A stretch of 58,526 nucleotides of DNA, taken from the NCBI RefSeq assembly GCF_001194135.2, contig NC_068988.1:53507500-53566025 (forward strand), read 5' to 3'. Under the pieces are notes generated by a model, which did no database searches, had not been told where the DNA came from, and saw only the letters and a program-made list of their open reading frames with translations. The number at the start of each line of letters is the position of its first letter. Positions within the stretch are counted from its first letter, which is position 1. The translations under genes and the position numbers were made by a program. Source of the DNA: Octopus bimaculoides. Lineage: Eukaryota. Shown here piece by piece: positions 14,461 through 58,526 of this stretch.

Positions 14461-15227
14461 GCTAACGACAAGATAGCTACAGAAAGGATGGAACCAAGAA
14501 AATTTTCTTTGCAATTCCCTCAAAACGCTAATGTTTACCAAGAGCATATTTTTAGTCAAGCATCCATTGTATGATGGCAGTTATGTCCCCGCTGTTGTCA
14601 TAGCTATGCCCGTGTTTATAAACAATTGTCAAGTGAACCGTTGCTGTCATTAAATATCCGTCAAATAAACGAGGCAACAAGTAGTTCAAACAACAAACAA
14701 ACCTTACTACCATAGTTACGAGTAAACGCAGAAGCCAGTTTATTGGAATCTTTCTCTGTAACAAAACAATTACCTCAATCGTCTGCTTCACTGATTTAGT
14801 GCATAGGTGAACCTGTTAACGTTTGACGTTGTCGTACAGGTTGTTGGCTGCTTAAAGACTGGGGAGGAGCAGTAGGAGAAGAAGAAATGTGTGCGTGTGT
14901 GTATGGGAGGGAAATAGTCTGTACCACGTCTGTACTAACCTTAGCGACTGTATCAGTGCAGATGTTTTGTTGCTGTTTACATGTGTTTGGGTTGTTATTG
15001 GTATATTTCTCTGGCTACCATTGTTTGTTTATTTTCCTCGTCTAAGCAATGCCATTTATTAATTACGACCCTTCTCGACTACTGCTTCACTTGTTTTGCA
15101 GCCTCTACAAAAGAAAACATCATCATCATCATCATCACCAGCAACAGCAGCAGTAACAGCTGCAACACTTGCAAAATGGCATGGAGCAGGGACTGCAGTT
15201 GCTTCAACAGCCAGAAGGGCAACAAAC

Positions 15228-15395
15228 GAAGAAGAAGAAGAAGAAGAAGAAGAAGAAGAAGAAGAAGAAGAAGAAGAAGAAGAAGAAGAAGAAGAAGAAG
15301 AAGAAGAAGAAGAAGAAGAAGAAGAAGAAGAAGAAGAAGAAGAAGAAGAAGAAGAAGAAGAAGAAGAAGAAGAAGAAGAAGAAGAAGAAGAAGAA
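15228..15395 (+). repeat. Pure (GAA)56
   Basis: 168 bp, uninterrupted. Confidence 0.98.
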
Positions 15396-15616
15396 TGGTA
15401 GTGTAGGAGACGAACGAAACAAAAAGAAGCAAAAAGAAAACCGCATTGTTTCTTCAAACAGGTTAATGACCGTTAAAAAAATTTATTTTCAAATGTCTTA
15501 AAAGTTGTGAATTTAGTGACATCGAGTGTTACGTTCTTTTTGTCACCTGACTTGACTGGTTTCTTGTTACAAACACTCACGCCTCATCTTTCTGTTTATT
15601 ATTATCCGAAACATTA

Positions 15617-21589: not shown

Positions 21590-22000
21590 ACACACACGGC
21601 AGGCTTTCAGTTTCCTTATTTCTTTATTGCCCACAAGGGGCTAAACATAGAGGGGACAATCAAGGACAGACAAACGGATTAAATCGATTATATCGACCCC
21701 AGTGCGTAACTGGTACTTATTTAATCAATCCCGAAAGGATGAAAGGCAAAGTCGACCTCGGCGGAATTTGAACTCAGAACGTAATGGCAGATGAAATACC
21801 GCTAAGCATTTCGCCCGACGTGCTAACGTTTCTGCCAGCTCGCCGCCTTACAGGCTCTCAGTTCCCGTCAACCAAATCCACTCACATAGCTTTAATCTGC
21901 CCGAGGCTATAGCAGAAGACACTTGTCCAAAGTGTTATGCAGTGGGACTGAACCCGGAACCATGTGGTTGGGAAACAAGCTTCTTACCACATTGTCACAT
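21590..22000 (-). mobile_element. Family C SINE 5' half (host of the 21616-21850 insertion)
   Basis: ccaaatccactcac...gaagacacttgtccaa...agtgggactgaacccggaaccatgtggttg. Confidence 0.85.
21616..21850 (-). mobile_element. Family A SINE (tail type X) nested in a family C SINE
   Basis: 16-bp TSD caggct(t/c)tcagtt(t/c)cc at 21600-21615 and 21851-21866. Confidence 0.93.
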
Positions 22001-33796: not shown

Positions 33797-33950
33797 TTGT
33801 ATGGGTGCGTATTAAAAGAAAGAGTGAGACAGCAAAAGACGTCCATACAAACATGCATGCATACATACGTACATATGTATATGCACACATACATACATAC
33901 ATACATACATACATACATACATACATACATACATACATACATACATACAT

Positions 33951-34481
33951 AGAAGAGGAGAGAAAGAGAACTGTGCACAGTACTAGAAATCAACTGCCCT
34001 GCGGATGTTAACATGAAGCTAAAGATCAGCGAAAAAGGAAATACATACGCTGAACTAGTGAGAAATCCGCAGTTACTCTACCCAGATTACAAATTCAGGT
34101 TTATACCTGTAATTATTGAGGCACTGAGATATGTAACACACTACCTAAGTACCAATCTTGATGAATTAAGTTTCTCAAAACCGGAAAGGAGAAAACTGAT
34201 TCGAAGACTACAGATCCAAGCCATCACAGTAAAACTTTCCAGAGGTTTATCATATAAGTATATATGCGCATGTCTAGACACACAACTATCTGCATGAGAA
34301 TGCATACATAAAACAAAACATACAAATCTGCACATGCAGTGACTCCAAATACTGCACATATACACACATACATACAGAAACACCTTTTTGGTGTTGATGA
34401 AATTCCAGTAAAGAAGCCTTGTATCTAGGTTAGAAACCAGTTCTTTATTGGCAAGAAATCTTGAAATAAAACTGAATAATA
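33951..34481 (+). mobile_element. 3' fragment of an RLE-type non-LTR retrotransposon flanked by (ACAT)n
   Basis: The frame from 33953 reads ELCTVLEINCPADVNMKLKISEKGNTYAELVRNPQLLYPDYKFRFIPVIIEAL...RRLQIQAIT, an RLE C-terminus parallel to IIDIACPAD...EERKVERY in the 57688-58526 copy. The 3' UTR ends in aaatcttgaaataaaactgaataat. (ATAC)n lies on both sides. Confidence 0.75.
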
Positions 34482-34542
34482 ACACACATACATACATACG
34501 TAGGTACGTCCATATAGGTATAAACACTCATATATGTATTAT

Positions 34543-47856: not shown

Positions 47857-48260
47857 CTTACTCTTTTACTCTCTTTTATTTGTTTCAGTCATTTGTCTGC
47901 GGCCATGCTGGAGCACTGCCTTTAGTCGAGCAAATCAACCCCAGGACTTATTCTTTGTAAGCCTAGTACTTATTCTATCGGTCTCTTTTGACGAACTGTT
48001 AAGTTACGGGGACATAAACACACCAGCATCGGTTGTCAAGCGATGTTGGGGGGACAAACAAAGACACAAACATATACACACACATACATATATATATACA
48101 TATATACGACGGGCTTCTTTCAGTTTCCGTCTACCAAATCCACTCACAAGGCTTTGGTCGGCCCGAGACTATAATAGAAGACACTTGTCCAAGGTGCCAC
48201 ATAGTGGGAATGAACCCGGAACCATGTGGTTGGTAAACAAGCGACTTACCACACAGCCAT
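47852..48260 (-). mobile_element. Family C CORE-type SINE with an internal microsatellite, full length
   Basis: tRNA-like head ggctgtgtggtaag...gggttcattccc, CORE-like ggcaccttggacaagtgtctt, internal TA/TG repeat, and 3' half ending (gtaaaaga)n. Confidence 0.9.
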
Positions 48261-55714: not shown

Positions 55715-55716
55715 TA

Positions 55717-55751
<35 letters not shown>

Positions 55752-55752
55752 T
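55715..55752. repeat. (TAA)n tail/target at the 3' end of R4/Dong-like copy 1
   Basis: tattgttattatt... lies directly beside the element's 3' UTR. Confidence 0.9.
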
Positions 55753-57557
55753 AAAAATAAAATATGGTCTGTTGTCTTCTGCTGAACCGGGGTCATCCCT
55801 TGACCCTAGGGTTACAGCAGGTCCTCATCTCATGGAGAGTAATCGGCGTAAAATGTGTGCGGAACCTAGCAACACTATTTTCTGAAGTTCTCTCACGTTA
55901 ACACTGCAAGGGAGTTTGTTGAGCTGCTTATGAAGGCCCTTTTTAATTAACCCTAACGCTCCAATCACTACTGGTGCTGTGCTGCTTTTCATTCCCCACA
56001 TGGTAGTCACTTCTATTTCTAGGTCTTTGTACTTAAATAACTTCTCAACTTCTATAATGAACACATTTGTCTCTGATGATACTGTCACATCTATCATTAA
56101 GCACTTCTTATTCTTCCCATCTTTGATGATTATGTCCGGCCTGTTTGCTTTGGTTTCTTTATCGGTGTTGATTGGCATGTCCCAGAGTACTGTTACATCA
56201 TCTTTTCCGGTTACAGTTTCATGTCTATCCTGGTACTATCTTTCTGAAGTTGGAAGCTGGTAGTGTTTACATATCTTCCAATGGATATATTGCGCTACTC
56301 TATCGTGTCTATGAATATATTCGGTTTTTGCAAGCGCTGAGCATCCAGTTAAGATGTGGTCCATTGTTTCATCCTGCTCATGACACATTCTGTATTTCGG
56401 GTCAGTGCCATCGTTCATTATTTTGTTGTGGTAAGCCCTGGTTGCCAAGCTTTGATCTTGTGCTGCTATGATAAAAGCTTCGGTTTCAGCCTTCAGTCCT
56501 GAGCTCTTCCTCCATACATGAGTGTCTCGTTTTTCTACGTCTGGTTTGTTCACTCTACATGGGTATTGGCCATGCATCGGTTTTTCTAACCATTCTTCTT
56601 TGCTCTTCTTCGGGCTTGTTTTTTCATCTCTTCTTTAACTCTTTTAGCAAACTGGGTTATTTTCTCACTCGCCTTCATCCTAGGTTCCTCCGTCATCAGT
56701 TGTTTCCTAAACTGTACAGATTCTTTGTATAACGAGTATAGCTTCTTTACTTTATCATGCTGGTAGACAAACTTCATTAGAGGATCTTTTGACAGCTCAA
56801 GATATGTATTTAATCCTACAATGGTGGTTTTGTAAGATAATTCTAATTGAGTTAGTCCTCTTCCTCCTATGTTTCTCGGTAAATAAATCCTGTTCACGTC
56901 CGCTTTTGGGTGGTTCATTCGAGTCATGGTTAGTAGTTTTCTGGTTTTGGAGTCTAGCTTCTTTATTTCGATCATTTGCCAGTTGATTATGTTGAAACTG
57001 TAAGCTACGGTTGGTACTGCAAGAGTGTTAATGGCTTCTATTTTGTTTGCAGCGTTCAGTTCAGTCTTTGTTACTAACCGTACTCTCCTGTAGTACTCTT
57101 TTCTAATCTTCTCTTTCATTGCTGAATGTTTTATGCCGTTACTTTCGTCTCTGCCAAGGTATTTATATGCTTCTTCCTGGTTCAGTGCTCGGATTCTTGC
57201 CTCTGTATCTACGCGGATATCCGCAGAACATGCCAGTTTGTCTCTTATGAAAGTGGCTTTCGTGCATTTCTCCAGTCCAAACTGCATCCCGATATCATCA
57301 CTGAACTTTTTAACCGTAGCAAGTAGACCTTGTTGTTCGTCATTTTTTGAGTACATTTTCAGATCATCCATATAGAACAGATGGCTGCCTTTTTTCTTCT
57401 TGATCTCATATCCATACCCAGTTTTGTTGAGCATGATACTTAATGGTGTCAGTGCTAAGCAGAATATTAAGGGCGACAGCAAGTCCCCCTGGAAGGTACC
57501 ACTTTTGATTTTGATTGGTCTGCTTGTTATTGATCTACTGGAATGGTTCAGTGTCAC
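55753..57557 (-). mobile_element. R4/Dong-like non-LTR retrotransposon (RLE type), 5'-truncated, copy 1
   Basis: RT motifs GTFQGDLLSPLIFCLAL and HLFYMDDLKMY, then MHGQY, a zinc-knuckle region (YRMCHEQDETMDHILTGC...RHD) and an RLE motif (RPDIIIKD...CLMID...EKLFKYKDL). One frameshift near 56590-56600 and one in-frame stop at 56236-56238. The 3' UTR 55753-55824 runs into (TAA)n. Confidence 0.92.
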
Positions 57558-57638
<81 letters not shown>

Positions 57639-57650
57639 CATTATTATTAC

Positions 57651-57683
<33 letters not shown>

Positions 57684-57687
57684 CATT
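57558..57687. repeat. (TAA)n/(ATT)n tract joining the two R4/Dong-like copies
   Basis: About 130 bp of near-pure triplet repeat. It creates the artefactual poly-Ile N-terminus of ORF 56586..57686. Confidence 0.97.
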
Positions 57688-58526
57688 GCCTTTGCACAGA
57701 TTCTAATGCTGAAGATGTACTACAGTGTCAGCTGTTCCTACCAGTGAACTAAGGTAACACCTCTTATTTTTCGAGCACCTTCCGGAGTATTCGGGCGTTT
57801 CCAAGCAGTACTGTTTTCTGCAAATGCTCCACCCTTATTACAGCCCCTATTTGTTCCACGTACTTCTCGAGATTTTTGCTCACTGTTCCCATGCTCCGAC
57901 AATTATTAATACTACTGCTACCTTTTTCATCGACCACAACTGCTTAACTTCCCAAGCTAACCTGTCATATCTCTCGACTTTTCTTTCTTCCTTATCGCAT
58001 ACCTTGTTGTCAGCTGGGCATGCTATATCTATAATCCAGCATAGTTTGTTTTCTTACTCAATTAAGACTATGTCTGGCTTCCTATTCTCTATCTCATGGT
58101 CGCACTGAATCATAAAATCCCATAAGATCTTTGCATTTTTATTTTCGATGATGCCTTCGGGTTTATGGTCGTACCAATTTTTTGTTCTGTCAATTCCATA
58201 CTTGTTGCAACGTGTCCAATGGACAAGCCGGGCTATATTATCGTGGCGTCTCTTATATTCCTTCTGGGCTAGTGGCGTACATTGGCTGGTAATATACCAT
58301 ACAGTTTCACCATTTTGTCCACAGATTCTGCATTTATCACTTTCTGATGTGTTGTCTATTCTGTATTTTATGTAGTTTGTTCTTAGTGCTTACTCTTGGA
58401 CAGCACAGATTAGAGCCTCCGTTTTCGGTTTTAAATCACTTTTAGTCATCCACGGCCATCTTTTTTCTCTATCTGTCTTATCTTCAACATCCCTATGAAA
58501 TTGACCATGCATTCTTTTCTTTAACC
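57688..58526 (-). mobile_element. R4/Dong-like non-LTR retrotransposon, 3' part of a second, divergent lineage (runs off the window)
   Basis: Minus strand reads MHGQFHRD...LKPKTEALICAVQE*ALRTNY...CRICGQNGETVWYITSQC...RRHDNIA...RKPDIVLIE*...WIIDIACPAD. It has in-frame stops. The 3' end abuts (TAA)n at 57687. Confidence 0.9.

What the first reader, a model, noticed from the sequence alone, without database searches (positions are those of the whole stretch)
55715..58526. Head-to-tail stack of two divergent R4/Dong-like LINEs built in (TAA)n
Seen (minus strand): lineage 2 3' end, (TAA)n of 130 bp, 5'-truncated lineage 1, then (TAA)n of about 38 bp. The two proteins share only the clade motifs, so they are distinct families. 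Lineage 1 is lightly damaged (one frameshift, one stop) and so fairly young. Established: Dong-type R4-clade elements insert in (TAA)n. Inference: each insertion leaves or enlarges a TAA tract that is the target of the next, giving self-propagating mixed arrays and seeding the abundant (TAA)n repeats, with two lineages competing for one target. More copies may continue beyond the window.
Basis: partly seen in the sequence, partly recalled or inferred. Interest (0 to 1): 0.75.

Follow-up and report, generated by a model that had tools for sequence, protein, structure and literature searches.

The report
Two stacked TAA-targeting Dong-like LINEs
Two dead copies of different families of a known jumping gene (Dong-type LINE) that inserts only into TAA repeats lie one behind the other in a TAA repeat of what is probably an octopus genome; this is an ordinary result of their target preference, and the same stacks occur in other animals.

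Summary
On the minus strand the order is:
- L2: the last 253 codons plus 3'UTR of one LINE that carries a restriction-like endonuclease (RLE).
- An imperfect (TAA)43 tract of 130 bp.
- L1: a 5'-truncated second element of 578 codons plus 3'UTR.
- A (TAA)12 tract of 37 bp, then unique DNA.

L1 and L2 are 36% identical over the whole 253-residue overlap. They fall into two old sub-lineages, each found in several animal phyla.

In nine related loci, 17 of 19 relatives have a sense-strand TAA tract after the ORF, and every 5'-truncated copy starts at one. This includes loci from a coral, an octocoral, a fish, a shrimp and a sea urchin. Three of these loci, from two samples of unidentified organism(s), show the same mixed head-to-tail stacks.

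The Dong-type, TAA-targeting reading is therefore well supported, and stacking recurs. Several claims remain open:
- A reverse-transcriptase (RT) phylogeny against reference Dong/R4 sequences was not done.
- Nothing supports the idea that these elements seed the genome's TAA repeats. The other three TAA tract clusters in the window show no Dong remnant.

TAA specificity of Dong and several Dong-R4 families in octopus are already published. Interest is low to moderate.

The parts
57767..58524 (-). L2: C-terminal 253 codons of a Dong-like LINE ORF (linker, CCHC knuckle, restriction-like endonuclease). It runs off the window end. It carries stops at 58392-58390 and 58056-58054, a 1-bp deletion near 57893, and Tyr in place of the knuckle His.
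   Evidence: Translation; 36% identity to L1, E 1e-52; best relatives 78% and 71% identical.
57688..57766 (-). L2 stop codon and 76-nt 3'UTR, ending directly in the TAA tract. It contains a small hairpin, GTTCACTGGTAGGAAC, that relatives share only weakly.
   Evidence: The start of the 3'UTR resembles that of the 78%-identical relative in L006.
57558..57687 (-). Imperfect (TAA)43 tract of 130 bp. It is the tail or target between the two elements, with three variant units (ATG, AGT, ATG).
   Evidence: TRF: score 239, 95% matches; sequence.
55828..57557 (-). L1: a 5'-truncated Dong-like LINE ORF of 578 codons, starting at about residue 425 of a 1001-residue relative. It holds RT motifs with YMDD, thumb, linker, CCHC knuckle and RLE. 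Lesions: frameshift at about 56600-56625, TAG at 56238-56236, Cys-to-Tyr at 56394-56392.
55752..55827 (-). L1 stop codon and 73-nt 3'UTR. A conserved three-tier hairpin lies at 55820-55779, about 27 nt before the tail.
   Evidence: MFE -23.9 kcal/mol, z -3.0. Seven-sequence alignment across phyla: 14 pairs, 10 with compensatory change, 89.8% paired against 31-45% when slid. The covariance model finds it only here in the window.
55715..55751 (-). (TAA)12 tract of 37 bp after L1, made of tail and/or remaining target, followed by unique DNA.
   Evidence: TRF score 67; sequence.
57555..57560 (-). ATAGTG at the L1 5' junction. The same hexamer closes the downstream TAA tract at 55717-55712. It may be a target-site duplication or joining microhomology. 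This is weak: the GTG could also be an L1 codon (Val where relatives have Leu).
   Evidence: Read from the sequence and from alignment with relatives. No matching sign at the L001 junctions.

Best explanation
These are two dead copies of (TAA)n-specific LINEs of the Dong type. Dong belongs to the R4 clade of LINEs that carry a restriction-like endonuclease. The copies come from two anciently separated sub-lineages and lie in the same orientation in one TAA microsatellite of what is probably an octopod genome.

Each copy arrived by target-primed reverse transcription:
1. The C-terminal endonuclease nicks TAA-repeat DNA.
2. The freed (TTA)n end primes on the (UAA)n tail of the element RNA. The protein probably recognises that RNA through a conserved 3'UTR hairpin.
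3. Reverse transcription often stops early. That is why L1 lacks about the first 42% of its ORF.

Every copy ends in a sense-strand TAA tail and leaves TAA on its 5' side. A suitable target therefore persists at both ends, and later insertions of any TAA-specific lineage pile up head to tail.

Shown: the anatomy, the homology, TAA on both flanks here and in relatives of five named animals, recurrent mixed stacks elsewhere, and 3'UTR hairpin covariation.

Inferred: the nicking and priming steps (by analogy with R2 and published Dong work), the role of the hairpin, and the order of insertion. L2 was probably first. It has the higher lesion density, though Fisher p is only 0.17, and there is a possible ATAGTG duplication around L1.
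For: - Anatomy and lesions.
- RT domain, and homology to solved R2 proteins through the RLE.
- Relatives across animals: a coral (Oculina) and a sea anemone (Exaiptasia), fish (Nothobranchius), shrimp (Penaeus) and insects for L1; Paramuricea, Diadema and Amphimedon for L2.
- Two non-overlapping identity clusters and a split NJ tree.
- 17 of 19 relatives have a sense-strand TAA tract 3' of the ORF, 13 within 160 bp. The binomial P is about 1e-18 against a generous background.
- Ten of the eleven 5'-truncated relatives begin within 50 bp of a tract; the exception is a near-complete L007 copy.
- Stacks: L001 (L2-like then L1-like), L002 (L1, L2, L1), L006 (fragment, L2, L1, L2).
- 3'UTR hairpin. 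Weak model hits outside the training set fall directly after ORF ends in L009, L006 and L008.
- Literature: Dong, DongAg and DongBg target TAA (PMC3812793). The Dong target is (TAA)n in most insects, molluscs and cnidarians, and no N-terminal zinc fingers are known (PMC7998251). O. vulgaris has 5 recently active Dong-R4 families with 1129 insertions (PMC13282606).
- Full-length relatives give no N-terminal zinc-finger Pfam hit.
Against: - No RT phylogeny with reference Dong, R4, Rex6, HERO or NeSL sequences was possible. Some HERO families are also microsatellite-specific (PMC4640811).
- No other copy of either family from the host genome could be examined.
- The junction lies in a 130-bp repeat within a gapped scaffold and could not be checked with reads.
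- Two tandem L2-like copies in L007 have almost no TAA between or after them.
- Loci from named species each showed a solitary copy, so stacking is documented in only two samples of unidentified organism(s), plus this window.
Confidence: 0.8

Rival explanations
1. Assembly artefact. The two elements are real TAA-flanked copies from different places, and the assembler joined them through the shared TAA repeat.
For: The window is a scaffold with 11 runs of N. A 130-bp simple repeat is hard to span with short reads. No read evidence could be obtained.
Against: There is no gap between 55029 and 58526. The same architecture is present in long, high-coverage contigs of other organisms, so it needs no artefact to explain it. 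A possible ATAGTG duplication ties the two sides of L1 together.
Confidence: 0.07
2. These are TAA-specific RLE LINEs of another clade, such as HERO or an NeSL relative, and not R4/Dong. The mechanism is the same and only the family label differs.
For: Some HERO families and the NeSL-related Togen families are microsatellite-specific (PMC4640811). The O. vulgaris annotation lists Hero families as well as Dong-R4 (PMC13282606). No reference-based phylogeny was run here. The N-terminal Myb-like domain got no Pfam hit.
Against: TAA is the published Dong target. The taxon spread (cnidarians, molluscs, insects, fish) matches that reported for Dong-like elements, Exaiptasia included (PMC7998251). 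Full-length relatives have no N-terminal zinc fingers. A WTREEYKQVMEA motif fits the diverged Myb described for R4/Dong.
Confidence: 0.1
3. The stack arose by unequal or ectopic recombination between TAA tracts of two separately inserted copies, not by a second insertion into the first copy's TAA.
For: Long simple repeats promote recombination and slippage. The data cannot tell the order or the mode of joining.
Against: In the three stacked loci (L001, L002, L006) neighbours are always in the same orientation and 5'-truncated copies begin exactly at a tract. Targeted insertion predicts this; random recombination would not enforce it.
Confidence: 0.05

Closest known systems
Dong of Bombyx mori, with DongAg (Anopheles gambiae) and DongBg (Biomphalaria glabrata); R4 clade
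   Same: RT followed by a CCHC knuckle and a PD-(D/E)xK restriction-like endonuclease. Insertion is in (TAA)n with TAA on both sides. Full-length relatives have a single ORF with no N-terminal zinc fingers (PMC3812793, PMC7998251).
   Different: No direct sequence comparison with these references was possible. The window copies are truncated, so the 5' HDV-like ribozyme known for Dong (PMC3774820) cannot be assessed. Rfam found none in full-length relatives.
Dong-R4 families annotated in Octopus vulgaris and other coleoids
   Same: The host is probably an octopod: interspersed repeats are shared with O. vulgaris at 75-90% identity. Several coexisting Dong-R4 families are reported there, 5 of them recently active (PMC13282606), and the superfamily is abundant in coleoids (PMC8967140).
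   Different: Those papers give counts, not target sites or stacking. Whether L1 and L2 are among those families is unknown. The nearest database proteins are 64% (L1) and 78% (L2) identical and come from unidentified organisms.
R2 (28S rDNA-specific RLE LINE, solved structures 9nl2, 9dou, 8gh6)
   Same: The same domain order from RT to RLE and the same presumed target-primed reverse transcription, with recognition of a 3'UTR RNA (PMC10499050).
   Different: Only distant similarity (E 9e-15 to 5e-5). The target is TAA repeats and not the 28S gene. Relatives have no N-terminal zinc fingers.
Repeat-specific LINE arrays: TRAS/SART in silkworm telomeric repeats, HeT-A/TART in Drosophila (own knowledge), and tandem Utopia insertions in U2 genes (PMC4640811)
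   Same: Elements whose target is a tandem repeat, or whose tail recreates the target, pile up head to tail, and several lineages share the site.
   Different: TRAS/SART and HeT-A/TART are APE-type LINEs at chromosome ends. Here the stacks are RLE-type and sit in interstitial microsatellites.

Membership tests
RLE-bearing LINEs (R2 group) | Reverse transcriptase domain | tested here: met
   Pfam RVT_1 in L1 at E 6e-10, above the cut-off. The YMDD motif is read. L2 is cut off before the RT by the window end.
RLE-bearing LINEs (R2 group) | C-terminal CCHC knuckle followed by a PD-(D/E)xK restriction-like endonuclease | tested here: met
   L1 aligns with R2 chains through the knuckle and the KPD...DV...K...KY region. 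L1 and L2 both keep RPD/KPD, IDV/IDI and the EK..KY / ERK..RY lysine motif. Each copy has one mutated zinc ligand.
R4/Dong clade | Insertion in (TAA)n, with TAA at both junctions on the sense strand | tested here: met
   Window. Relatives: 17 of 19 have a 3' tract and all ten TAA-flanked 5'-truncated copies start within 50 bp of a tract. Other host copies were not available.
R4/Dong clade | RT phylogeny groups it with Dong, R4 and Rex6, apart from R2, HERO, NeSL and CRE | not tested
   No reference sequences were obtainable. The original papers are not held, and the supplement of PMC7998251 has no sequences.
R4/Dong clade | Single ORF without N-terminal zinc fingers, with a diverged Myb/SANT-like N-terminal domain | tested here: inconclusive
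   The window copies lack the N-terminus. Full-length relatives give no zinc-finger or Myb Pfam hit. A WTREEYKQVMEA...W motif is seen by eye.
R4/Dong clade | HDV-like self-cleaving ribozyme at the 5' end, cutting at the TAA/element junction (PMC3774820) | tested here: inconclusive
   Not assessable in the window, since L1 is truncated and the L2 5' end lies outside it. Rfam finds nothing in full-length relatives, but such ribozymes are poorly detected by sequence models.
R2 clade proper | Specific insertion in the 28S rRNA gene | tested here: not met
   The flanks are TAA repeats and unique DNA. There is no rRNA match in the window.

The most novel reading that the evidence does not exclude
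Mixed Dong stacks may be more than debris. Promoter-less elements of different lineages could be co-transcribed through the TAA spacers from upstream copies and released by 5' ribozymes, so that the array itself keeps several lineages alive. Sister RLE lineages in the same genome may aim at other microsatellites; an (ACAT)n-associated fragment lies at 33953-34494. Together they could shape the unusually microsatellite-rich octopod genome.
Probability: 0.2. Interest if true: 0.55.

Novelty: new member of a known kind. Interest (0 to 1): 0.3.

Why it matters
The finding adds two uncharacterised families to a known class of microsatellite-targeting LINEs. It also shows that two deep Dong-like sub-lineages share the TAA target and stack together in more than one animal.

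If a genome-wide count bore this out, it would help explain how site-specific LINEs persist in harmless niches, and how much they contribute to TAA repeats in repeat-rich genomes such as octopus.

The conserved 3'UTR hairpin gives a concrete RNA element to test as the template-recognition signal of Dong-type reverse transcriptases. That is of some interest, because R2-type enzymes are being explored for targeted insertion.

None of this overturns current understanding.

Tried and rejected
The junction is unverified.
- Exact look-ups of two window ORFs found nothing on record, so the scaffold could not be extended and no other host copies were obtained.
- HDV-like ribozyme: Rfam at gathering score on five loci and the window gave only a tRNA. 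Permissive mode on the Oculina 5' end gave only noise.
- N-terminal Myb or zinc finger: no Pfam hit at E up to 10.
- Reference Dong/R4 sequences: PMC309301 and PMC307436 are not held, and the PMC7998251 supplements hold no sequences.
- Idea that the host SINE carries a TAA tail and is mobilised by Dong: rejected. The other SINE copies in the window (ending at 21991 and 48259) do not end in TAA.
- Idea that the orphan TAA tracts are tails of very short Dong copies: a covariance model of the L1-type hairpin finds nothing near them, even with filters off. Other families' UTRs were not modelled.
- Literature searches for Dong head-to-tail arrays and for the SINE sequence found nothing relevant.
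- The ATAGTG duplication is kept only as a weak hint. The GTG may be an L1 codon, and the L001 junctions show no comparable sign.
- An L2-type 3'UTR structure got only 5 weakly supported pairs.
Full report
**What is in the sequence**

Read on the minus strand, the region holds two LINE remnants bounded by TAA tracts.
- 58524-57767: an open-frame remnant of 253 codons that enters from beyond the window end. I call it L2. Its stop codon is at 57766-57764 and a 76-nt 3'UTR follows.
- 57687-57558: an imperfect (TAA)n tract. TRF reports 130 bp, 43.3 copies and 95% matches.
- 57557-55828: a second remnant of 578 codons, L1. Its stop is at 55827-55825 and a 73-nt 3'UTR follows.
- 55751-55715: a (TAA)n tract of 37 bp, then unique sequence.

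There is no run of N between 55029 and the window end.

**What the two remnants encode**

L1 carries the C-terminal half of a reverse transcriptase: Pfam RVT_1 at E 6e-10, with a YMDD box. It aligns with solved R2 retrotransposon proteins from the RT fingers through thumb, linker and zinc knuckle into the restriction-like endonuclease (E 9e-15 to 2e-13).

L2 covers only the linker, knuckle and endonuclease. It aligns with the matching part of L1 end to end: 36% identity, 55% positives, 4 gaps, E 1e-52. The two therefore share much more than clade motifs, though they are clearly different families. No other copy of either lies in the window.

**Damage**

- L1 has one frameshift in an A/G-rich run near 56600-56625.
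- L1 has one TAG at 56238-56236, where relatives have Trp.
- L1 has Tyr at 56394-56392, where relatives have the first Cys of the CCHC knuckle.
- L2 has stops at 58392-58390 and 58056-58054 and a 1-bp deletion near 57893. It also has Tyr in place of the knuckle His.

Both copies are dead. L2 has the higher lesion density, but the difference is not significant (Fisher p = 0.17). Without a consensus of host copies, 'young' cannot be measured.

By alignment with a 1001-residue relative, L1 starts at about residue 425. Roughly the first 42% of the ORF and the whole 5'UTR are missing.

**Relatives and the two lineages**

- A search with L1 gave over 1000 proteins. The best are 64% identical. Named sources are a coral (Oculina), a sea anemone (Exaiptasia), a killifish, a shrimp and insects.
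- A search with L2 gave 442 proteins. The best are 78% and 71% identical. Named sources are an octocoral (Paramuricea), a sea urchin (Diadema) and a sponge (Amphimedon).
- The first set is 51% identical to L1 (median) and 37% to L2. The second set is 38% identical to L1 and 50% to L2.
- The ranges of identity to L2 do not overlap, and a neighbour-joining tree splits the two sets cleanly.

L1 is thus much closer to coral and fish elements than to its neighbour L2. These are two old sub-lineages, each spread over several phyla.

**Target preference, tested on relatives**

No other host copies could be fetched, because exact look-ups of window ORFs found nothing. I therefore fetched nine loci around relatives. 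I mapped Dong-like coding hits and TAA tracts in them.

- 19 elements reach the C-terminus. Of these, 17 have a sense-strand tract of at least four TAA units within 800 bp after the ORF, and 13 have it within 160 bp.
- Ten of the eleven 5'-truncated copies begin within 50 bp of a sense-strand tract. The eleventh, a near-complete L007 copy, has no tract nearby.
- Full-length copies have the tract 460-900 bp upstream of the first protein match, which leaves room for the 5'UTR and N-terminal region.
- The background, even counting the arrays themselves, is 0.12 tracts per kb per strand. Thirteen of 19 within 160 bp then has a binomial probability near 1e-18.
- The pattern holds for L1-like copies in Oculina, Nothobranchius and Penaeus, and for L2-like copies in Diadema and Paramuricea.
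- The exceptions are two tandem L2-like copies on a low-coverage contig (L007), where only two or three TAA units remain.

This matches published knowledge. Dong, DongAg and DongBg target TAA microsatellites (PMC3812793). The Dong target is (TAA)n in most insects, molluscs and cnidarians (PMC7998251).

**Stacks elsewhere**

Three loci repeat the window's architecture. They come from two samples of unidentified organism(s), on long, high-coverage contigs.
- L001: TAA, an L2-like element, TAA, a 5'-truncated L1-like element, TAA.
- L002: TAA, a full-length L1-like element, TAA, a truncated L2-like element, TAA, a full-length L1-like element, TAA.
- L006: four Dong-like pieces alternating between the lineages within about 7 kb, each separated by a TAA tract, and a fifth piece 3.7 kb further on. 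All are in one orientation.

Head-to-tail stacking of different TAA-specific lineages is therefore recurrent. The single loci sampled from named species each held a solitary copy. I found no paper in the held library that describes such Dong stacks. The key 2004 survey is not in that library, so I do not claim the stacks are undescribed.

**A conserved 3'UTR hairpin**

The 3'UTRs of L1-like elements from the window and from six other loci share a three-tier hairpin, and the tail begins some 25-45 nt after it.
- The seven-sequence alignment has 14 pairs, and 10 of them show compensatory changes.
- 89.8% of cells pair, against 31-45% when the partners are slid.
- The covariation score is 0.63, against 0.07-0.18 for the slid controls, and no shuffle out of 500 reaches it.
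- In the window the hairpin lies at 55820-55779 and folds at -23.9 kcal/mol (z = -3.0).
- A covariance model built from the alignment also gave weak hits directly after ORF ends in three elements outside the training set: L009 (E 0.0085), L006 and L008.

By analogy with R2, whose protein binds its 3'UTR RNA to start target-primed reverse transcription (PMC10499050), this hairpin is the likely template-recognition signal. That role is an inference.

**How it most likely works**

1. The endonuclease nicks TAA-repeat DNA.
2. The (TTA)n 3' end pairs with the (UAA)n tail of an RNA held through its 3'UTR hairpin.
3. Reverse transcription proceeds and often aborts, which gives 5'-truncated copies such as L1.

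Each copy keeps TAA on its 5' side and ends in a sense-strand TAA tail. The site therefore stays a target, and further insertions of any TAA-specific lineage stack in the same orientation.

The hexamer ATAGTG lies at the L1 5' junction (57560-57555) and again at the end of the downstream tract (55717-55712). It hints that L1 entered at the 3' edge of a tract that already followed L2. The hint is weak, because the GTG may equally be an L1 codon.

**What is not supported**

- Seeding of TAA repeats. The window's other three TAA tract clusters are at 3364-3453, 10154-10216 and 41346-41426. None has a Dong-like coding remnant or a copy of the L1-type hairpin, even with filters off. One of them follows a SINE-like copy, but other copies of that SINE do not end in TAA.
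- Competition between the lineages. The data show coexistence on a shared target, not competition.

**Membership**

The features of an RLE-type LINE are met, and so is the Dong hallmark of TAA at both junctions. These points remain open:
- An RT tree against reference Dong, R4, Rex6, HERO and NeSL sequences. None could be obtained.
- The N-terminal domain. Relatives give no zinc-finger or Myb Pfam hit, and a Myb-like motif is seen only by eye.
- The 5' HDV-like ribozyme known for Dong (PMC3774820). Rfam finds none in relatives.

Some HERO families also target microsatellites (PMC4640811), so I leave about 10% for a different clade label.

**Host and context**

A third, very diverged RLE fragment in the window has one database relative, a predicted protein of Octopus vulgaris (75% identity). 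That O. vulgaris locus shares many interspersed repeats with the window at 75-90% identity. The host is therefore probably an octopod.

Dong-R4 is reported as abundant in coleoids (PMC8967140). In O. vulgaris it has five recently active families and 1129 insertions (PMC13282606). Several coexisting Dong families in such a genome are expected.

**Limits**

A mis-join across the 130-bp repeat in this gapped scaffold cannot be excluded, and I give it about 7%.

**Verdict**

This is a correct observation of an ordinary, already understood kind of element. The modest addition is that mixed stacks of two deep Dong-like sub-lineages, and a conserved 3'UTR hairpin, recur across animals.

Noticed in passing
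window 33953-34494 (+), flanked by (ACAT)n at 33880-33951 and about 34495-34515; L010 10150-10590: A third, very diverged RLE-LINE 3' fragment. Its C-terminal endonuclease part is 26% identical to L2 and scores phmmer E down to 3e-10 against L2-like proteins. Its 5' truncation point abuts an (ACAT)n tract, not TAA, and ACAT repeats follow its 3' end. The only database relative, in Octopus vulgaris, is truncated at a different point yet also joins a (CCAT)n(ACAT)n tract. This suggests a sister lineage that targets ACAT-type microsatellites, on two copies only.
   Followed up: partly
window as a whole, compared with L010 (O. vulgaris OX597824.1): The window shares many interspersed repeats with an O. 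vulgaris chromosome at 75-90% identity. Examples are 47858-48259, 21615-21846 and 42044-42278. The host is probably an octopod, and the window itself is largely microsatellites and SINE-like copies.
   Followed up: partly
window 55779-55820 (-); L001 11770-11827, L002 18701-18758 and 12766-12823, L003 11919-11973, L004 11866-11923, L005 11710-11767: A conserved three-tier 3'UTR hairpin of the L1-like lineage, with compensatory changes across a mollusc, a coral, a fish and a shrimp. It is probably the RNA signal recognised for reverse transcription.
   Followed up: yes
window 41427-41560 (-) with TAA tract 41346-41426: A SINE-like copy with an internal deletion ends directly in about 27 TAA units. 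Other copies of the same SINE in the window, ending at 21991 and 48259, do not end in TAA. The origin of this tract is unexplained.
   Followed up: partly
L003 8147-8300 and L002 14808-15000: Full-length relatives start with a G+C-rich, visibly self-complementary stretch directly after the upstream TAA tract, where Dong of Bombyx has its HDV-like ribozyme. Rfam gives no hit. Further in, the ORF has a conserved WTREEYKQVMEA...DANKLANVRRDI motif that looks Myb/SANT-like.
   Followed up: partly
L007 3782-8880: Two L2-like copies lie in direct tandem with almost no TAA spacer (only GATGATAATAATC). The second ends in AATAATAATAA followed by a run of T. This is an exception to the TAA-spacer rule, on a low-coverage contig.
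   Followed up: no
window 57641-57687 (-); TAA tracts in L001, L002, L006: The commonest variant unit inside the TAA tracts is ATG (...AATGATAATAA...), which is also how the L2 3'UTR runs into its tail. It may be plain mutation, or a trace of extremely short insertions. Not tested.
   Followed up: no
window 40703-41330 and 15060-15500: Two long trinucleotide arrays: a (GAT/GAC)n-type array of about 600 bp next to the 41346-41426 TAA tract, and an array of about 300 bp near 15100-15400 whose six-frame translations read poly-Arg, poly-Lys, poly-Ser and poly-Leu.
   Followed up: no
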